The notes: a model not told the origin generated them from the sequence alone. A stretch of 64,000 bases of DNA from Zygnema circumcarinatum SAG 698-1b (GCA_037447605.1 CM074816.1:124001-188000); one strand, 5' to 3'. Positions 44,679 to 64,000 are shown, numbered from the stretch's first letter. Translations and numbers: made by a program.

Positions 44679-47600
44679 ATGGATTCTTCTGAAATTCGAA
44701 GTGGTGCAGATCCTGAAGAAGAACGCGCAGAGCAGGTTCAGGTATTAAGGTTGTCTGAAATTCATGAAATAAGGGACGATGCCACCCTTCCGATCGCAGA
44801 AAAGCTGGATCAAGTTAAGGTGTCTCCTGCACCATTGTCGGAGGGGAACTTGACAGATGAATGCGCTTCTTCTGAGGTCTTTGAAGAAGTGGACGTGCCA
44901 CCGAGGCGAGCGACAAAACCAGAATCCTTTAAAAAAGTGTTACAGGTCGCAGTGCCTCTGACAGATAAGCCGCTGCAGTCTCCCCGGGCGAAGACTTCGC
45001 AAAAGCCGCCTTCACCAATACACTGGTTTCCGAGGACCAAGACTGAGTCGTATCTCGAGAAAAAAATTCGCCTTCTGCAGGTAGAAATCGCAGGGAGATA
45101 AACTCTTGGAATTTTCGTTGCCAGTTTATTTTAAATACATATGGAGCTATCAGCTGGATAGCTATCAGCTCTTTTGTTCGTTCAAAACATCGTCTTGCTT
45201 AGTATTGAGGTCAGGCTTGAAAATGCCGTGGATAATGACAGCGTTCCTGAACATTCACTGTTGACAATGACAGGAGAAGGACGGAGTATCACACGGATCT
45301 CTCGATGAAACTTTGGTTCCTGCCAAGCTGAGCCGAATAGAAAGGGAAAAGCTTGCAGCAGCGACAGCGGCGCAGGAAGCCAAGGAAAGCCGACACATTG
45401 CATTAGTAGAGGCGACCTGGTGTCGTATTCTGGATGCAGCAGGGTATGCATTTTCTTCATTTTGTTGCCTAGGGAGCCTTCAAAGTGAAGAGAAGCAAGC
45501 GAAACGACTAACAAATGCTTGATTCTGAATGGTTTTTCCCTTGATGTGGAGTAAACAGATTTAACATCCAGTAGAACGTTTTCATGCACGCTCCGCTACA
45601 TGCCTTGCCGACCGTTTTTGTCCCATGCATATTGCTTTTTAATTTGTTGTTCATCTTTTCATTTTGAATGATCCTGAGGCGATTCTCGGTTATGGTACAC
45701 TCTTGAATTCTGAGCGCTGCAACTGAATAGAACTGAACCGTGAAGAGCAAGATTAGGGTATAAAAGAATGCTTTAAAAATAGAAGATATGGTGTTTTTCA
45801 TCGCATGTATGGGAATTCCCCTTTCTTTGTCACGTGATTGCGGCGTTCATGTCCTTATCGTTCTGTTTGCTGCAGAATTCCATCGAATGATGCAGTGCAG
45901 ATAGCACAGGAGGCAGAGGACCGAGCAGCTGAAGCTCTTCGTGCAGCTACCGAAGTCGGTGCACTTTTGCTCGACCAGTCAAAAAGCAGAGGCAGCTTGA
46001 GAGACTCTATTTTCACATCCGCTCAGGATGTTAGAGAGATAGAGAGGAAAGTTGTGTCAGCTGTAAAGAGTGCACTTGACAAGGTGGCGAGGGATCATGT
46101 GAGGGATGAATATGACATTCAGGATTTTTTCACGGATCAGACTTTAATGCGGCTCTCCAATACAGAGGTGCTTCCAACTGATGATACCGACGGCATGAAG
46201 TCAAGGGCAGCTGAATTTGAAGATAAACACATTCAGTGTGCAGCGTATACCCCCATGACAGATAACCGAGAAACTGAAGCTGATGTGGCTTTGATCATGG
46301 ACGCTACAAATTGCTCAGCTCAAAATGCGCAGGACAAATACATAGAAGGAGCGCCCACGAGGAAGCGAGAGGGAGCAGCAGAGAAAGAGGCAAATGCAGA
46401 AGTGATACTCCAAGCAGGTCTTCTGAACGAAGGTGGCTCCGGGCCCTCCGTTGTGATAGAACCAGCAAATTCTGAAGGTGAATCTTATACAAGCCCGTTC
46501 TATGATCCGAAACGTTTGAAAAGTCCTCTACGAAGCCCTGTTGACAGCTCAACTTTCAGCCCTGATCTCAATTCCCTCAGAGCGCCACAATGCGTTGTCA
46601 AACCTAACGAGGTTGAGCAGAATGCGAAGCCCCATTTTATGGAAGAGTTTATGATTGATCGAGTGAAGGTGTTGGCACCGCAGCAGAAAGTTGCCCTGGC
46701 TGCTGTGGTGTCCACTCACAGCCTCGTCAATAACTTGCTAGAGGAAATAAGGGATGTGAGGGAGACCGGGGTTCGGAGAATTAGTGGAGGCGGGCTTGGC
46801 GATATACTGAAAAAGCACGTCTCCAGACTGCAAGCTGAAAAAGCTGCTGCTGAGAACAATGCCATCACAGTGCAGAACGAGGCAGAAACGGCCATTGACG
46901 GAAGGAATGAAGGAGAGGAGGAGGAGGAGGAGGACGAGGCACTGAAGAATCATGCATCAGAGTTAGAAAGAGATCTGAACGTTGCCAAGGTGACGACGGA
47001 AGACTTGAATGCAGAAGTCAGTGGACGAATGAGTAAGGATGAATCACGAACCGACTCAGAAGGAACAGAAGGAGGGCTTGGGCAGACACTTCTGCAGCAT
47101 GAAATCCAACTCCAAAGGGAGCCAGAGGCCAGCAAGGCAGTTACAGACTTTCGTGCCAGGAGTGAAAACCGGAGCCTTTTACGTTGGCAAGAAACAGAAG
47201 GAAGTCTGGGGGATGTTGTTTTCAAGAAGCCCTTGTCACGCTTGGAGCGCGAGAAGCTTGCAGCCTCAGAAGCAGCAAAGCAAAATGGAGGGGATTTGAC
47301 GCCTCGATTGGCGAAGGGAGGGCGAGAGAGAGACAGAACACAGCAGACCACCAATGACTGTCCGGGTCTCGGAGACATTCTAGTGAAGCGTGTAGGAGGG
47401 CTGCAGGCAAAGGTGCAGGTACAGAAAAAAACGCAAAGTGAAGGACCTCGAGTACCTGTAAAATCAGTGCCTTCTCCTTCTCCTGCTTTTGAAGGGGACT
47501 TGGGAACGGCTTTCGTGAAACGTAAGTCAAGGCTTGAATTGGATTTGGAGAAAGCAAAGACAGGAGCTCCAAGCCAGTATCTGAGCAGCCGCAATAAGGA

Positions 47601-48127
47601 GAGGTCCAACAGTTCGCAGAAGGGCGAAGGGCTGGAAGACCTGCTTGTGTCCCGTAAATCGAAGCTTCAGCAGGAGCAGGAGGCAGGACGTTTGACAAGA
47701 GGGCCAATGGAGACGAGGTCTATTGGAAGCCAAAAGCAGGGAGACGAAAAGAGCGAGAGTGCAAAAGGTTCAGGCGGTTTGGGTGATGTCCTAGTGAAGA
47801 GGGTGTCCCGATTGGAAAAAGAGAAAATGCAACAGTCGGAGGTTGTCGTGCAGGCTCCCAGGAAGAACGAAAGCAGGAGGGTGGAAACGGATTCTTGGGC
47901 CGGTTTAGGATTGGGGGAGTCCATGAAGAGGCCCGTTTCTAAGCTTGAGAGTGAACAGGTCAGAATTACATTAACTGAGCTCAATCACTGTTTTTTTTAG
48001 TAAACGAATTACAGCTTGTCAGCAGTAGTTGACTTAGCTCTTGCTGACTTTCTTTTTTGCTCTCCATGCCTCTTGATTGCAGGCTGCTTGGAAAGCGGAG
48101 GCTGCAGCAAAATCACGCAAAGGCTGA
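44679..48127 (+). CDS. Uncharacterised plant coiled-coil protein ('myosin-2 heavy chain-like' family) with repeated GLGDxLxKxxSRL motifs; exons 44679-45080, 45274-45443, 45876-47958, 48083-48127
   Basis: PSPIHWFPRTKTESYLEKKIRLLQ|E..LDETL..REKLAA..ALVEATWCRILDAAG|I matches a conserved plant family as recalled; phases consistent. Confidence 0.7.
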
Positions 48128-56768: not shown

Positions 56769-58808
56769 TCACACGTGTGTGCTCTGCCATAGGTCGGTCT
56801 CCGCCAGCTTTAGACCCCTTTTGGAGCATCTCCTCCGCACGTGCCGCAGAATGGCGGGCCCCACCACTTCCGGCGCGGTCAAATGGGGGATGTGGCCGCT
56901 GACCGGGAGGAGGTCCAGACACGCAACGGAGGACATGTGCTCGCACATGTGCTCCGCCACCTTCAACGGAACGGCCGCATCGAACACCGTCTGGACCAGG
57001 TGCACGGGAACTGTGACCTGCGCCATGGAACAGGCCCTAGGTCACGCTTCAGCGGCTTAAAATTTGAACGGAAAATGGCATTGATCTCACGATGGCGATG
57101 ATGCCATCAAATGTACATGGCCAACATCAGCATGGGGAAGGAACCACGAGGAACTGGTCGCTAAGGACCTTAGCACCACCTGTTTAAAAAGTTAGTTAAC
57201 GAAAAACAAAAGGAAAGGAGCAGGTTCCCGCGGATGGAACCCCCCCCCCTTTGAGGATGAACGGAGAACGGAACGGAGAACGGAACGGCGAGAGCATGGA
57301 AAGGGTCAGCACCTGTGGGAGAATGTGGCGCATGTCGCTTCTAAAAATGGTCCTTGTGATGTGAAATGCGATGTCGGGCCGCATGAGGTACAGCGTACGG
57401 CAGTATTCCCTCACTTTCGCGGAAGAATTTTCCTCCCCCACCAGCATTTCTCCGAACCCTGTTGCCCACGCCTGCATGGAAAGCCTGATAGTTCTAAGTT
57501 AATGATCAGCTGCTTTCAACAGCTATACGCTCTATGAATAAGGAAAGCAGCAGCTTGTTGGTTAAGCAACCCATCAACCCATTTGTTTAATGATTGACAG
57601 AAAAAGGGGACTTTGTTTATTTGAACAAATCACGAGTTATGAACCGGGAATAAGTTGTTATGAGAATATTTTTCACCCTGTAATTCGCCTGCATCCTCGC
57701 AAAGGCCTCATCCAAATCCTCCACGTTGAACCCTCCGAGGTATCCGGGCTCGTTGATGTACCTGAACCCTCTCCCTCATGTTTTGCTGTGAGCAGTTGAC
57801 CCCTTAGACCCACTCGCTGCTGCAACAGATACCTAAACCTGAAAACAAAAAAGAAACAGTTCAACTGCCCTTCAAACATATCAAAACCCTAAACTTAAGA
57901 TATATCAGATTCTACACAATTCAGCTTTACAGTTTCACATCAAACGCGGAAATCGAGCGCATCGTCAACCTGAAACTTCTTTCTTCTTCGAAGATTTCCA
58001 ACTTCCCAGTTTCAGCTAAAACCACTCGAATAATAGAATTGAAGGTTTAGGATTGTAAATTTTTAGAGTTTAATTGTGTTTAATTACTAAGTTTTAAAGA
58101 CTTTACCTCGGGGATGCTCCCAGCGCTATGATTTGCTGGAAGAGATTTGGAGCTTCTATGGAGGCCAAGAGGCCGATCATTCCCGACATGGAGTGGCCCA
58201 CGTAACTGCACCGCTCTATGCCGAGCTCGAAAAGAATATCGAGCAAGTCGTCCGCGAATCCGTGCAGTGTGCTGTAACGCTCGTAGTCGAACTGCTCCGT
58301 GTTTGTGCTGCACATGGAACAGCTCCGCGCGGGGAGGGGGGAGCAAGGGAACTGTCAGCCCAAGAAGAAGGGAGGGGGGGGAGGAGGAGGAGGCTGGAAT
58401 GAGAGCATTAAATGGGGTGCAAATGGGGCATAAGTGGGGATAAACAGGTTGGCAATATGGTGTGCGTAGGGTGCAAATGGGGTGTCAAAGTGAATAGCAA
58501 ATAAGGAAATGAGAGGGGTACGAATGGGGTGTAAACAGGGCATGAGTGGAGGGTAGACGGTGTGTGAAAGGGGGATAAAAGGGCAAAAACCAAAAAAAAA
58601 AAATAGAAATATGAAAATAAAAAAGAAGGCGAATGGTGTACAAATGGGGTGTACCTGCCCCCGCCCATGTGGTCGAAGAGCACGAGTCGGTACTTTTTGA
58701 GGTCGAAGAAGGGCAGCACAAACTGCCAAATGCTCTGATTGGTGCCGAACCCGTGCGCGAGCACCACCGTCTCCGGGCCCTGCCCCAACACTCGCACATT
58801 GTGCCGCT

Positions 58809-58845
<37 letters not shown>

Positions 58846-59119
58846 NNNNNNNNNNACGACTTGCGGAAGTATGCAGTTCTTATTTCATCGTATAAGGGCT
58901 GCATTTACCGTGAGCTGCAATGGAACCATTGTATGAAATTTGAAGCGATGAAAGAGACCCAATTCAATAGCAATAAGAATACTGATATTTAAAAAGACTA
59001 AACGTGCGATCGAATTTCGACGAGAGAGAGCGGAGCAGCACTTGCAGAGAGGACGAGAGGCGCTCCTCCTCCTCCTCCGCTGCAGCCGGTAACGGGTGGC
59101 GACTATGAAGGGAAGCCAT
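56769..59119 (-). CDS. KAI2: KAI2/D14-like alpha/beta hydrolase; exons 59119-59042, 58806-58655, 58307-58107, 57761-57677, 57471-57313, 57017-56769
   Basis: HNVRVLGQG..VVLAHGFGTNQSIW, FDHMGGGS|TN, YVGHSMSGMIG, GASPR|YIN, MRPDIA..TIFRSDMRHILP, FDAAVP, SGHIPHL; Ser-Asp-His triad present. The symbol denotes the family; orthology is not established. Confidence 0.88.
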
Positions 59120-60499
59120 GGCTGCCTCCCTCTCCCACTCTCCCACTCTCTGTGCCTCTATCCCTCTCTCTCTCCCTCTTCCTCTCTCTCTCCCTCTCCC
59201 CCCTCTCTTTCCCTCTCTCTTCGATTCTCTCTCTCCCTCTCTTACACTCTGCAGCTCCATCTCTCCCTCTCTCTTCCTCTCTCTTTCCATTTCTCTCTCC
59301 CTCCCTCTCACCCTCTCACTCTCTCACTTCTCACTCTCTCACTCTCTCTCTCTTTCTCTCTCTCTCCCTCCCCCTCCCTCTCTCTATTTCTCTCTCTCTC
59401 CCTTCCTCCCTCTCTCCTCTCCCTTCCTCCCTCTCTCCTCTCCCTCTCCCACTCCCACTCCCACTCCCACTCCCACTCCCACTCCCGCTCCACCGCCACC
59501 GCCCCTTTCTTTCCGCCCGCCATCCTCCGCGCTCCTCCCAGGCTCCATGCGGAAATCGAATGACCGAATTTGTAACTCCATGGAAACGGCCGACTGTAAT
59601 ACCTGCCACTGCCACGTGGCGATCTCACGAATCCTACCACGTGACCTCGCATCTGCTCTTTTGGACCGTAGCGACTTCGGATCCACACAATGATACGAAA
59701 ATGTCGGTGGCCTGAACTTTCACGAACGTTGCACCGTTTGTCCAGAAGAAAAACTTCGCCCTGTTCAAATTCGCAAAGGCGTAAATGCAGAAAATGACAA
59801 AATTGTACGAGTTGCAGCTGCAAATCCGTACACCTGATCAAGGAAGGCCGTACAGTTCATCCTAGATGCGGCCATTGGCCATTTGACTTTTGTGGTGTTC
59901 GTACAGCTAATTTTGGCACGCGAGGCTGCCCAGCCAATCAGCGCAGAGCGCGAGATCCTCGGCGCGTGGGCCTCTCCGCCGCTTATAAAATCCAGCGTCA
60001 TGTCGTATCGAGATATATCGTGTAGAATGACAATACGATACAATATCGCAATATACGAATCGATACAGAAATTCAGAGACATGTAGCTCGTGTTCTCTGT
60101 CTTTCAGTAAAAACGTCCGTAGAGTAAATACTGTAGTGTTGAAATTCCCTGTTTGAAAATCAATTCCTCATGGATCGGCTGTTTGAGTTAAACTGGCATG
60201 TGACCCGGCCCGAAGTAGCCGTTCGTCGGCTCTGCCCGCGCGGTACGGCGTACGGCGCGCCCCGGAGCCGTTGCCGCATGCCACGTCACTGTCCGTACGG
60301 GAGCTTTCTGACTAGAGCCAGTAGCCGTACAGCTACCTGCGACACGTGGTGCAATGTGATAGGTATCGGGGATTCGGACATGCGAGGGTCCCCCTGAGTG
60401 CGCCACGTGGAAAGTAGGCCTGGCGCATCGGGCGGTGCCGACACCCGGAGGGCCGTACGGCCGGGGCGCCTTTTGGTGGCAGAGAGCGCGGGAGAGGGA

Positions 60500-60945
60500 G
60501 AGTGGGGGAGGCCGACGGAGAGGGAGAGAGGGAGAGGGAGAAGGGAGAGGGAGAGGGAGAAGGGAGAGGGAGAGGGAGAAGGAGAGGGAGAGGGAGAGGG
60601 AGAGGGAGAGGGAGAGGGAGAGGGAGGGAGAGGGAGGGAGAGGGAGGGAGAGGGAGAGGGAGAGGGAGAGGGAGAGGGAGAAGGAGAGGGAGAGGGAGAA
60701 GGAGAGGGAGAGGGAGAAGGAGAGGGAGAGGGAGAGGGAGAAGGGAGAGGGAGAGGGAGAAGGAGAGGGAGAGGGAGAGGGAGAAGGGAGAGGGAGAGGG
60801 AGAGGGAGAAGGGAGAGGGAGAGGGAGAAGGGAGAGGGAGAGGGAGAGGGAGAGGGAGAAGGGAGAGGGAGAGGGAGAGGGAGAAGGAGAGGGAGAGGGA
60901 GAGGGAGAGGGAGAGGGAGAGGGAGAAGGAGAGGGAGAGGGAGGG
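60500..60945. repeat. (GAGGGA)n purine tract between two divergent genes
   Basis: Read directly. Confidence 0.92.
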
Positions 60946-61239
60946 AGGAGGAAGGAACAGGTCCTCTTCTCACAGCGTAGGCCCCCCTTCCTCCCCTTAC
61001 CCTTCCCCCTCTCACAATCTGCGTCTGATTTTTTTTTTAACTCCCAGTAATTTTTATATATGTATTCTATATGTATTTTCTTGTTTATTTTTTTATTTTT
61101 TTTGAAGTAAAAAAAAATCTTTCTCCGCCAATTAATTACGATTGCTTATCGCGCAAAATTTTCACCTCTGGACCTTCCCCTATCTGAGCTCCCCCCCGTC
61201 TCCCCCTGTGCAGACAGGCGGCCTTTAAACGCAGCCGCC

Positions 61240-64000
61240 ATGGCCGCCCTCCCCGTGCAAGCGACCGTCTTTCTGTGTCTCCTAACCCTAATGTCCCGTT
61301 CCATGTCACGAATTTCCGCCCTTCAGTTCCACGGCCCCCAACAGCTGATCGATGTGGTCAAATACGCTGAAGGCGATTTCCTAATCCCTATGCCGCCCAA
61401 GGATGCGAGGGGTTCCATGGAGAACGTTACAGTTCCGTTGAACGGAGTCGCAGGATTCCAGAGAAGGATGCCCCAGAAGGGCAGCGCGGAGGGAGTGGAG
61501 GCGGCAGCTTCTACCCCATTTGTACCCGATGGCATGAGGGCGTCTGTAAATGTGAATCCGCAAGTGGGAGTGGTGGGGTTTCCCGGGCTCAGCGCCTATG
61601 AGGAGGCGACAAGTGGCACTGGGCTGTACGCAGGCTCCAACGCGGCATTCGCGCCGTCAGACGCGGCGATGGCGGTCGGTGGGGGATACGTCGTTCAGGT
61701 GTGAACACGGAAATGGGTATTTGGAGGGGAGGTTGGGAGAGGCTAACTGTTGGGGCTCTGCCATACTTTGTTTAAACCAAAAAATGCAAAGCTTTAAACA
61801 GAATTAAACCAAGTTGTTTTTATTTTTTTTAAAGGAGTCTTTTTTATCTGAAAGGGTCTTCTGCAATTTCAGCTTGTTTTTAATTTTTATTTTTTGAAGT
61901 CTGCTTTATAAAAAAGCATTGAATTTAAGGAATGATGTTCCTAACCCCAGTTCCTTTCCTTTCCTTTCCTTTCCTGCCCCAGGTGGTGAACTCGGCCATC
62001 CGCGTGTTCCGGTCGCGCAACAAGCGCCGCCTCACGCTGCCCACGCCGCTCAACCAGTTCTGTGCGTTCCGGCACCAGGAATCAGCCCATAGTTTAACAG
62101 TCATTCCTTGCTATATAACGACTTGAAACTGAACTGGAACTGGAACTGAACTAAAACTGAGCTGGAACTGACCTGAGCTGGAACGGGAACTAAAACTGCT
62201 GGAACTGGAACTGGAACTGAACTGGAGCTGAACTGAAGCTGAACTGAAGCTGAAGTGGAGTTGAGCTGGAGCTAATGTGGAGCTGATGTGGAGCTGATGT
62301 GGAGCTGATGTGGAGCTGATGTGGAGCTGATGTGGAGCTGATGTGGAGCTGATGTGGAACTGATGTGGAACTGATGTGGTGATGTGGAACTAAACTGGAA
62401 CTGAACTAGAACTTAACTGAACTGTAACTGAGACTATCGGTTGGGTTTCCATGCAGTCAACGTGACGCCTTGGGTGAGACGCAACGGAACGGACACCATC
62501 ATCGCATTCGGCGACAACATCCTGTAAGTGCCTGCCACGTGGACCAGTCAGACGTGTCGTGTCACATGGCGTGAGTCACGTGCTCATACTCGAGTGCTCG
62601 AGTGCTTTGCCACGTGGACCAACGAAACACTGCCATGTGGTGCATTCTGACATGTCATGCCACGTGGCGTGAGCAGCATGCTCGTACTTTGCTGCTTTGC
62701 CACGTGGACCAGCCAAACACTGCCATGTAATATGAGGCTGACGTGTCATGCCACATGTCATACAGGGACCCCCACGTGGCGTACGACGGGCGGTCGCAGC
62801 GGTGGTTCGTGTCGGCGTGGGGCACGCGCGGGCCGGACTCGACGCGGTTCGCGGAGGACGAGGCCTTCCAGGTCCTCGCCGTCAGCCGTACGAGGAGCCC
62901 GCTCAGGGGCTTCGTCTACTACAAGTACAACGCGGAGTGAGTGCATGGCCATGCATGCATCATGCATGGCTAGGCCCATGCATGGCATGCATCTATGGTC
63001 AGGCTCATGCATGGCATGCATGCATGGGCATGCTCGTCCCTTGCTTAGCCAACTCAGCTTCTTAAAGCAAACAAAAAATAATTCAACAATTGTTTCGATC
63101 AGAACTACAAGGACAGAGTGTGCGTACCATTCTTTTGGTACAGGTTTTAAGATTAGAGTGATTTGAACACCGAAAAAGTGTAGTAGGAGTTGGCTGTTGT
63201 TGTGCATCAGACCCTTAAGTTGGCAGGCAGACAAAGCGAATGCTGACAGTTCCATGCTGGATCTATGCGGCCGCCGTTCCGTCAGCCTGCTGGACAGCGA
63301 GGCGCTCCATGCGGTGGCGGGGCCGTGCCCGTGCTATCCGGACTACGCGCTCATTGGCTTCGACGAGTACGGAGTGCACATAACGGCCGACAGCTACTCT
63401 CTGATCTCGGGGAACTTTGTCGGCGCGCAGATCTACTCCATCAACAAAAGGGTGAGAGGACCCTTCATGCGCCTGCATGCATTGTATACGGCTTTTTAGT
63501 TCCCATTTTGTTGGGGGGGGAACTGAGGGAGACCGAGAGGGGGAGAGGGAAAGGAGAGAGGGAGAGGAGTGGGAGCGGGAGAGGGAGAGGGAGACAGGGA
63601 AAAGGAGAGAGGGCGAATGAGAAAGAGGGAGAGGGAGAGGAAGAGATGGAGAGATGGAGAGGGAGAGGGAGCGGGTGTAAAGGAGAGGGCGAGAGCGAGA
63701 TGGAGGGAGAGAGGTTGATAGGATGAGGAGGAGGAAGAAAGCGAGAAAACTAGCTGGGGGAGGAGGACAACCCCCTCCCCCCCCCCCCTGACGTTCCTCC
63801 CTCCCTCCCTCCCTCCCTCCTCCCTCCCTCCCTCCCTCCCTCCTCCCTCCCTCCCTCCCTCCCTCCCTCCTCCTCCCTCCCTCCTCCTCCCTCCCTCCCT
63901 CTCCTTGCCTGCAGGCCCTGACATGGGGCAGAGACACCACGGTCGCCGCGCGGTTCGACGGCGCGGCGGCGGCGGGCGGGCGGCTCCTCGCGCCGCGCGG
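61240..64000 (+). CDS. Secreted bacterial-type probable beta-rich/propeller protein, 3' end outside the window; exons 61240-61698, 61983-62061, 62457-62523, 62766-62936, 63250-63451, 63915 onward
   Basis: Signal-peptide-like N-terminus; motif string PSDAAMAVGGGYVVQ|VVNSAIRVF..PLNQF, DPHVAYDGRSQRWF, LAVSRTRSP, DYALIGFDEYGVHITAD, FVGAQIYSINKR|AL; canonical in-phase introns. Confidence 0.72.
62125..62430. repeat. Intronic (GAACTG)n and 11-bp (GTGGAGCTGAT)n tandem arrays
   Basis: Read directly. Confidence 0.9.

What the first reader, a model, noticed from the sequence alone, without database searches (positions are those of the whole stretch)
61240..64000. Intron-containing secreted protein of apparently bacterial type (HGT candidate)
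Seen: six in-phase exons giving a signal peptide and the motif series PSD..AVG.GYVVQVVN..IRVF / DP.V.YD...QRWF / LAVS.T.SP / DY..IG.D.YG..IT / F.GAQIY.I.K.AL. From memory, this series matches an uncharacterised family of extracellular bacterial proteins (PPD..AVG..H.VQ.VN, DP..YD..RW, DYP..G, GAQIYA..K), and I know no angiosperm equivalent. Established: soil-bacterial HGT into streptophyte algae is documented for other families. Inference: a domesticated bacterial gene acting at the cell wall or apoplast with unknown enzymatic or lectin function.
Basis: partly seen in the sequence, partly recalled or inferred. Interest (0 to 1): 0.75.

Follow-up and report, generated by a model that had tools for sequence, protein, structure and literature searches.

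The report
Bacterial-type secreted propeller gene in alga
A green alga related to land plants carries an expressed, intron-split gene for a secreted beta-propeller protein whose family is otherwise seen mainly in soil bacteria; it is a solid new case of an already known kind of bacterial gene gain, and its biochemical function is still unknown.

Summary
Six in-phase coding exons with GT..AG introns lie at 61240-64000 (+). A further 5'UTR intron lies upstream. Spliced transcript contigs from three studies carry every junction. The gene runs off the window: about 343 codons are visible, and the transcript continues about 1.3 kb further.

The protein has an N-terminal signal-peptide-like leader and no Pfam or NCBIfam match. 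Its nearest relatives are six eukaryotic transcriptome proteins of 626-661 aa (one a 429-aa fragment). A profile of these hits an unnamed family with more than 2,500 proteins in the search and 540 loci in prokaryote species genomes. Those genomes are mostly Acidobacteriota, Chloroflexota and Actinomycetota from soil.

A bacteria-only HMM matches exons 1, 2, 4 and 5 in colinear order. The eukaryotic sequences form one clade (100/99). It is sister to the sampled bacterial subfamily, not nested in it, and lies inside the wider prokaryotic family. An ancient bacterium-to-alga transfer is therefore the best reading, but the donor is unresolved.

A confident AlphaFold model of the closest full-length homologue is a seven-bladed beta-propeller with no specific solved relative. 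Function is inferred only: an extracellular, pocket-based enzyme or binder.

The parts
60947..60976 (+). 3' end of a 5'UTR exon. Transcripts extend at least 229 nt further upstream, into or past the GGGAGA microsatellite.
   Evidence: The loose-end consensus of X2, X3 and X6 matches 60947-60976 exactly and only once in the window. It is followed by GTAGGC.
60977..61213 (+). 5'UTR intron (GT..AG)
   Evidence: Contigs resume at 61214, after CTGTGCAG.
61214..61698 (+). Exon 1. The ATG is at 61240 and the exon holds 153 codons. It ends in APSDAAMAVGGGYVVQ.
   Evidence: HMM positions 65-140 of the bacteria-only model, 29 bits.
61240..61320 (+). Signal-peptide-like leader, about 27 codons. The hydrophobic core is ATVFLCLLTLM and the leader ends in ...RISA.
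   Evidence: Kyte-Doolittle maximum of 2.45 at residues 8-18. The homologues have leaders in the same position, followed by a shared F-G-P/S-Q/P motif. No SignalP run was available.
61699..61982 (+). Intron 1, 284 nt, 36% GC
   Evidence: (X3 record 7 is contiguous across it).
61983..62061 (+). Exon 2 (VVNSAIRVF...NQF)
   Evidence: 81% identical to P0001 residues 193-218.
62062..62456 (+). Intron 2, 395 nt, filled with 11- and 22-nt tandem repeats
   Evidence: The joint 62061>62457 is present in 4 runs.
62457..62523 (+). Exon 3. It holds two N-x-T sequons and is poorly conserved.
62524..62765 (+). Intron 3, 242 nt, with five CACGTG sites
   Evidence: The joint 62523>62766 is present in 4 runs.
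62766..62936 (+). Exon 4 (DPHVAYDGRSQRWF ... LAVSRTRSP ...)
   Evidence: 65% identical to P0001. 30 bits against the bacteria-only HMM.
62937..63285 (+). Intron 4, 349 nt, partly retained in two runs
   Evidence: The joint 62936>63286 is present in 3 runs. Separate contigs cover the intron at about a quarter to two fifths of the exon depth.
63286..63451 (+). Exon 5 (H..CPCYPDYALIGFD ... FVGAQIYSINKR)
   Evidence: 43 bits against the bacteria-only HMM.
63452..63914 (+). Intron 5, 463 nt, made of GA-rich and CCTC microsatellites
   Evidence: (records are contiguous across it).
63915..64000 (+). Start of exon 6. The gene continues beyond the window.
   Evidence: The X3 contig runs 1345 nt further.

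Best explanation
This is a genuine, expressed nuclear gene of a streptophyte-type green alga. It encodes a secreted protein that is probably about 650 aa long. After a signal peptide and a variable linker of about 100 aa, the body of the protein is a seven-bladed beta-propeller.

The propeller belongs to an unnamed family of secreted or surface proteins. The family is abundant in soil Acidobacteriota, Chloroflexota, Actinomycetota and other prokaryotes.

The most likely history is one ancient transfer from a bacterium into an algal ancestor. After the transfer the gene gained introns, a eukaryotic signal peptide and N-glycosylation sequons, and it evolved fast.

Shown here: the gene structure, splicing and expression; family membership; the distribution, which is dominated by prokaryotes; a single origin for the eukaryotic copies; and the fold, modelled on the closest full-length homologue.

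Inferred: the direction of transfer and the function. I expect the protein to enter the secretory pathway and to act outside the cell, in the wall, mucilage or surrounding medium. It would act through the pocket on the top face of the propeller, which is lined by the conserved motifs that start each blade: D41, DP..YD..RW, H..CPC.D, G.D and GAQ.Y..K. The pocket would bind or cleave an extracellular polymer or small molecule.

All eukaryotic copies have replaced two residues that are nearly invariant in bacteria: Q179 became Y, and E195 became S, A or T. The window's nearest relative has lost several more. The algal proteins have therefore probably shifted from the bacterial activity.
For: - Gene model and splicing.
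- Eukaryotic setting: the introns are spliceosomal, and an intron-bearing KAI2/D14-like gene lies 2.4 kb upstream on the other strand.
- Closest relatives: a search of 1.84 billion representative proteins with exon 4 found only five true hits, all eukaryotic transcriptome proteins. The exons map colinearly onto residues 15-378 of P0001.
- Bacterial family, part 1: a profile of the eukaryotic proteins hits P0013-15 at about 1e-80. P0013 lies on an 85-kb contig of densely packed bacterial genes.
- Bacterial family, part 2: 2571 proteins score E<=1e-5, with source names such as Solibacter usitatus, Bryobacteraceae and Chloroflexi, and none has a Pfam domain. There are 540 loci in prokaryote species genomes. 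The best 80 are 40 Chloroflexota, 20 Acidobacteriota, 8 Actinomycetota, 5 Pseudomonadota and others.
- Direct match of the window: a bacteria-only HMM matches exons 1, 2, 4 and 5.
- Trees: the eukaryotes form one clade, with SH-aLRT 99 in the quick tree and 100/99 in the careful tree. That clade lies inside a family rooted on distant prokaryotic surface proteins.
- Conservation table.
Against: - The eukaryotic clade is sister to the 47-94 sampled bacterial sequences, not nested in them. That split has support of 94/56 in the careful tree and 89 in the quick tree. One quick tree gave a basal polytomy with two bacterial sequences.
- The stem of the eukaryotic clade is long (about 1-1.4 changes per column), so long-branch attraction towards the outgroup is possible.
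- Only the 80 loci most similar to one bacterial query were sampled, out of 540.
- The species of the six eukaryotic homologues are unknown, so the breadth of the family in eukaryotes is not established.
- Absence from land plants rests on a word-limited search.
- No functional data exist for any member, there is no conserved bacterial gene neighbourhood, and there is no specific structural relative.
- The window's C-terminal half could not be read.
- The fold and the tree rest on the proxy P0001, not on the window's own joined protein.
Confidence: 0.72

Rival explanations
1. The family is ancient in eukaryotes, or at least in the green lineage. It was inherited vertically and lost many times, and its similarity to bacterial proteins reflects common descent rather than transfer.
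For: The eukaryotic sequences form a clade outside the sampled bacterial subfamily. They are very divergent from each other, at 33-43% identity.
Against: Only seven eukaryotic sequences were found, against thousands of prokaryotic ones in at least nine phyla. The deeper outgroups are prokaryotic surface proteins. No named plant, fungal or animal protein was returned. The 30 nearest ESM Atlas clusters are essentially all bacterial.
Confidence: 0.1
2. The protein is a non-catalytic binding module, such as a lectin or receptor-like propeller, and not an enzyme. The algal lineage kept the scaffold but lost the bacterial active site.
For: All eukaryotic copies replace bacterial Q179 and E195. P0001 also lacks EPPD, the DDR of DDRM.Q and the R of RWGDY. 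The window has APSD in place of EPPD and D in place of the invariant N194. The best structural matches are binding propellers of the WD40 type.
Against: Many pocket-type residues are kept in the window: D41, D103, P104, D109, R114, H..CPC, D178, D185, Q207, Y209 and K213. Other eukaryotic copies (P0003, P0004, P0012) keep EPPD, RWGDY and E499. No catalytic residue is known for the family, so loss of the active site cannot be judged.
Confidence: 0.25
3. The conserved His-x(n)-Cys-Pro-Cys motif at the start of blade 3 forms a metal or redox centre. The family would then be an extracellular metallo- or redox enzyme, not a glycan-active one.
For: H..CPC is kept in 97% of the bacterial members and in all eukaryotic members, including the window. 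Several seven-bladed propellers are metal enzymes; this last point is from my own knowledge and was not tested here.
Against: No model coordinates were available to check the geometry. There is no similarity to any known metal-binding propeller above the generic fold level. The two cysteines could simply be structural.
Confidence: 0.15
4. The stretch is bacterial contamination or an assembly artefact, not an algal gene.
For: None beyond the bacterial-type sequence.
Against: There are six GT..AG introns, all removed in transcripts from three studies. Intron composition and microsatellites match the rest of the window. An intron-bearing KAI2-like plant-lineage gene lies next door.
Confidence: 0.01

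Closest known systems
Unnamed prokaryotic secreted-propeller family, for example the uncharacterised protein of Solibacter usitatus Ellin6076 (P0063), the metagenome proteins P0013 and P0111, and the Tengunoibacter tsumagoiensis locus L079
   Same: The homology is colinear over about 520 residues at 30-38% identity. The motif series is shared: (E)PPD, DP..YD..RW, AVS.T.P, H..CPC.D...G.D, GAQ.YA..K, QPA, W..NT, M.QV, YP.I, RWGDY and NWGT. Both have an N-terminal signal peptide. The predicted structures match at TM 0.88-0.90.
   Different: The algal gene has introns, a eukaryotic leader, a linker of about 100 aa and N-glycosylation sequons. It carries eukaryote-clade substitutions at Q179, T193 and E195. 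A long branch separates it from all sampled bacteria. The family has no name, no Pfam or NCBIfam model and no studied member.
Solved seven-bladed beta-propellers: WDR61 (3ow8), YncE (3vgz), virginiamycin B lyase (2z2n) and CylK (7ron)
   Different: Sequence identity is 6-10%. All these rows are tied with dozens of WD40 proteins. About 180 residues of the model are insertions with no counterpart. No shared motifs were found, so no function can be carried over.
Sialidase / BNR six-bladed propellers (GH33)
   Same: They are secreted beta-propellers with conserved Asp and Arg residues at the starts of the blades. They appear among the Foldseek hits.
   Different: TM is only 0.3-0.37. There is no Pfam BNR or sialidase match and I saw no Asp-box or FRIP motif. 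The blade number also differs.
Documented gains of soil-bacterial genes in streptophyte algae and land plants: LPR1-type ferroxidase (PMC9168544), GRAS (PMC9942845) and subtilases (PMC6713707), as their abstracts state. Earlier notes of this scan list further candidates in this same genome.
   Same: The pattern is the same: a bacterial-type gene in the plant lineage that now carries introns and eukaryotic targeting signals.
   Different: Those families have known functions and are retained in land plants. This family is uncharacterised and, as far as the searches show, is not present in land plants.

Membership tests
Unnamed prokaryotic secreted seven-bladed propeller family (the 'H..CPC / RWGDY / NWGT' family) | Significant colinear match of the sequence to a profile built from prokaryotic members only | tested here: met
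   Exons 1, 2, 4 and 5 score 29, 11, 30 and 43 bits at HMM positions 65-140, 142-165, 186-240 and 254-295. The shuffled maximum is at most 6 bits.
Unnamed prokaryotic secreted seven-bladed propeller family (the 'H..CPC / RWGDY / NWGT' family) | N-terminal-half motifs: (E)PPD, DP..YD..RW, AVS.T.P, H..CPC.D, G.D, N.F and GAQ.Y..K | tested here: met
   All are present in the window apart from these changes: EPPD is APSD, N194 is D, and Q179/P180 are Y/A.
Unnamed prokaryotic secreted seven-bladed propeller family (the 'H..CPC / RWGDY / NWGT' family) | C-terminal-half motifs: QPA, W..NT, DDRM.Q, YP.I, RWGDY and NWGT | not testable with these tools
   This part of the gene lies beyond the window end. 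Transcript contigs exist but their letters are not available to me.
Unnamed prokaryotic secreted seven-bladed propeller family (the 'H..CPC / RWGDY / NWGT' family) | Seven-bladed propeller fold | tested here: inconclusive
   The fold is shown for the closest full-length homologue, P0001:140-661 (pLDDT 91.4). It is not shown for the window's own protein, because the exons were not joined.
Horizontally acquired gene of bacterial origin | Stable integration in the eukaryotic genome: introns, expression and eukaryotic neighbours | tested here: met
Horizontally acquired gene of bacterial origin | A distribution dominated by prokaryotes and narrow in eukaryotes | tested here: met
   There are 540 prokaryote genome loci and more than 2571 proteins, against 7 eukaryotic sequences. 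The species of the eukaryotic sequences are unknown, and absence from land plants rests on word-limited searches.
Horizontally acquired gene of bacterial origin | The eukaryotic clade is nested within prokaryotic sequences in a supported tree | tested here: inconclusive
   It is nested at the level of the wider family, because the outgroups are prokaryotic. It is sister to the sampled close subfamily (94/56) or in a basal polytomy.
Sialidase / BNR propeller (GH33) | Asp-box repeats, an FRIP motif and a six-bladed fold | tested here: not met
   There is no Pfam match for the exons or the homologues. Foldseek TM is 0.3-0.37. The best alignments are to seven-bladed propellers.
WD40 repeat proteins | WD40 sequence repeats (Pfam WD40) | tested here: not met

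The most novel reading that the evidence does not exclude
The family is a new class of extracellular propeller enzyme built around a conserved His/Cys-Pro-Cys plus acidic pocket. Soil bacteria would use it on a soil or cell-wall polymer. An ancestor of the streptophyte algae captured it around the move to land and re-tuned it (Q179Y, loss of E195) for the alga's own wall or mucilage. In that case it would give a handle on an unknown wall-modifying or environment-sensing activity.
Probability: 0.15. Interest if true: 0.7.

Novelty: new member of a known kind. Interest (0 to 1): 0.42.

Why it matters
Gains of bacterial genes by the algal relatives of land plants are an accepted theme, so one more case does not change the picture.

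What this case adds is a large family with no annotation at all. It has thousands of members in soil bacteria, no Pfam or NCBIfam model and no studied member. It now has a confident fold and a eukaryotic branch with clear expression.

The eukaryote-specific substitutions at otherwise invariant positions point to residues worth mutating. If an activity is found, it would at one stroke annotate a widespread secreted protein of Acidobacteriota and Chloroflexota and an algal apoplast protein.

Tried and rejected
- Pfam and NCBIfam scans of each exon, of the six eukaryotic homologues and of bacterial members found no family.
- PDB sequence searches with exons 4 and 5 and with profiles A1 and A4 found nothing.
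- tblastn of exons 4 and 5 against plasmids found no match.
- The word search with exon 1 was blank. This was expected, because candidates are limited to 84-268 aa.
- The Atlas feature search with exon 1 gave nothing usable.
- The first AlphaFold run, with only 5 sequences, gave pLDDT 43 and was discarded.
- Alignment A2 was too diverse for the genome scan. A3 worked.
- A search for conserved neighbours of the bacterial genes in 80 loci found none.
- The viral contig scan found no relative, so there is no sign of a viral vector.
- I tried to identify the species behind the homologues by searching papers for run accessions SRR8128902, SRR8128906, SRR8128908 and ERR12684112. Nothing was found.
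- A paralogue search within the window found none.
- A look-up of earlier findings by sequence was blank.
- Readings rejected: sialidase/BNR, WD40 membership and contamination.

Full report
**Observation**

The stretch 61240-64000 (+) holds the 5' part of a split gene. Reading the DNA and translating each exon by reference gives these exons:

| Exon | Coordinates | Note |
|---|---|---|
| E1 | 61214-61698 | ATG at 61240, 153 codons |
| E2 | 61983-62061 | |
| E3 | 62457-62523 | |
| E4 | 62766-62936 | |
| E5 | 63286-63451 | |
| E6 | 63915 to window end | cut by the window |

All five introns are GT..AG, and the phases are consistent. Exons are 57-83% GC. Introns are 36-62% GC and full of microsatellites.

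**Transcript evidence**

Logan contigs from four runs of the same organism were laid on 61140-64000. Contigs from three studies (X2, X3, X6) are spliced exactly at all five junctions, with no mismatches. A short contig from a fourth run (X1) carries two of the junctions.

The contigs also show a 5'UTR exon that ends at 60976 (GTAGGC follows) and a UTR intron that ends at 61213. The X3 contig is 2628 nt long, and 1345 nt of it lie beyond the window. The window therefore shows about 343 codons of a protein of probably about 650.

Intron 4 is also present in separate contigs. Their word depth is 27 against 112 in X2 and 11 against 26 in X6, while the other introns are near zero. This looks like partial retention. 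It would stop translation at the TGA at 62938-62940.

**Rule followed**

I never joined them. For folding and for trees I used the closest full-length natural homologue, P0001, as a proxy.

**Relatives**

The exons have no Pfam or NCBIfam match. I searched 1.84 billion representative proteins with HMMER, using exon 4 as query. It found five true hits, all eukaryotic transcriptome proteins from EukProt Trinity assemblies or Logan RNA contigs. A sixth hit is a repetitive, unrelated protein.

P0001 (661 aa) is the nearest. The six exons map colinearly to its residues 15-378, with identities of 34, 81, 43, 65, 71 and 38%. Its mRNA has long UTRs and 41% GC, so it comes from another organism.

A profile of the eukaryotic proteins (A1) hits the metagenome proteins P0013-15 at about 1e-80. 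P0013 lies on an 85-kb contig packed with typical bacterial genes, including TonB_C, a sigma-54 activator and HipA_2.

A mixed profile finds 2571 proteins at E<=1e-5 among the 8000 candidates scored. None has a Pfam domain. Source names include Solibacter usitatus, Candidatus Sulfopaludibacter, Bryobacteraceae, Chloroflexi and Betaproteobacteria.

A scan of one genome per prokaryotic species finds 540 loci. The best 80 are 40 Chloroflexota, 20 Acidobacteriota, 8 Actinomycetota, 5 Pseudomonadota, single Myxococcota, Eisenbacteria and Dormibacterota, and two archaeal MAGs. One locus is in a genome not labelled as a MAG, Tengunoibacter tsumagoiensis strain Uno3.

An HMM built from the prokaryotic rows alone matches the window's exons 1, 2, 4 and 5 in colinear order, far above shuffled controls.

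**Phylogeny**

A quick tree of 103 rows and a careful tree of 56 rows under LG+C20 PMSF agree on two points.

- The six eukaryotic proteins are one clade, with support of 99 and 100/99.
- With distant prokaryotic surface-anchored relatives (P0016-18) as outgroup, that clade is sister to all sampled close bacterial sequences. Support for this is 89 in the quick tree and 94/56 in the careful tree.

One quick run left a basal three-way polytomy with a deltaproteobacterial and a Solibacteraceae sequence. The eukaryotic stem is long.

The tree therefore shows one origin for the eukaryotic copies inside a prokaryote-dominated family. It does not nest them in a particular bacterial group, so no donor can be named. 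Within bacteria the tree mixes phyla freely, which fits a gene that moves among soil microbes.

No viral relatives were found.

**Is it really algal?**

Yes. Apart from the spliced introns, the next gene upstream on the minus strand (pieces between 56772 and 58812) is an intron-bearing KAI2/D14-like alpha/beta-hydrolase. Its best solved relative is Physcomitrella KAI2-like E, at 5e-23 for one exon. Earlier notes of this scan describe the genome as a green alga related to land plants. I did not test that.

**Fold**

AlphaFold2 on P0001:140-661 with a 105-row alignment gave pLDDT 91.4 and pTM 0.93. Foldseek against the PDB returns only generic propellers at TM<=0.49, such as CylK, DPP8 and sialidases.

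ESM Atlas models of bacterial no-Pfam clusters match at TM 0.88-0.90. More distant clusters fuse the same propeller to Por_Secre_tail, DUF11/CARDB or Flg_new_2. P0016 and P0018 match NCBIfam's 'invert_tail' model, a putative C-terminal anchoring domain; only P0018 reaches its cut-off score. Across prokaryotes, then, this is an exported or surface module.

**Function (inferred)**

The window's protein starts with a hydrophobic leader. Leaders lie at the same place in all full-length homologues. It also has three N-x-T sequons.

The residues that are nearly invariant across the family sit at the starts of blades, as they do in propeller enzymes and binders that use the top-face pocket. The window keeps D41, D103/P104, D109, R114, AVS, P147, H..CPC, D178, G183, D185, G205, Q207, Y209 and K213.

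All eukaryotic copies differ from bacteria at Q179 (to Y or L), T193 and E195 (to S, A or T). P0001 has also lost EPPD, DDR and the R of RWGDY.

I therefore expect an extracellular protein that binds or processes a polymer or small ligand in its central pocket, with a specificity that shifted after the transfer. The split between enzyme and binder, and a possible metal or redox role for H..CPC, remain open. There is no conserved bacterial neighbourhood to help and no literature on the family.

**Verdict**

The case is a new member of a known kind: a gene of bacterial origin in a streptophyte alga. It involves a family with no annotation and no known function.

Noticed in passing
window 56772-58812, minus strand: An intron-bearing KAI2/D14-like (RsbQ-type) alpha/beta-hydrolase gene lies here. 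The exon piece at 58106-58315 hits Physcomitrella KAI2-like E (6azc) at 5e-23, and many D14/KAI2 structures as well. Other pieces lie at 58411-58812, 57199-57477 and 56772-57026. A 10-N assembly gap sits at 58846-58855.
   Followed up: partly
window 62937-63285 (intron 4): Separate contigs cover this intron at about a quarter (X2) to two fifths (X6) of the exon depth, while the other introns are near zero. This looks like partial intron retention. It would end the reading frame at the TGA at 62938-62940.
   Followed up: no
window 60490-60943, 62127-62430, 62524-62765, 62950-63035, 63525-63901: The 5' region and the introns are built largely of short repeats. They include (GGGAGA)x75 just upstream of, or inside, the 5'UTR exon; 11- and 22-nt tandem units in intron 2; five CACGTG sites in intron 3; a CATGCATG-rich 29-mer repeated three times in intron 4; and GA-rich and (CCTC)x28 tracts in intron 5.
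   Followed up: no
window 45838-48000, plus strand: A 720-aa open frame holds a unit repeated about eight times, of the form G-LGD-(I/V)L-K-(R/K)-x-S-(R/K)-L-E/Q-x-E-K. I did not examine it.
   Followed up: no
loci L005-L084 (prokaryote genomes): The bacterial homologues stand alone, with no conserved neighbours. Their tree mixes Chloroflexota, Acidobacteriota, Actinomycetota, Pseudomonadota and two archaeal MAGs. This suggests frequent exchange among soil microbes.
   Followed up: partly
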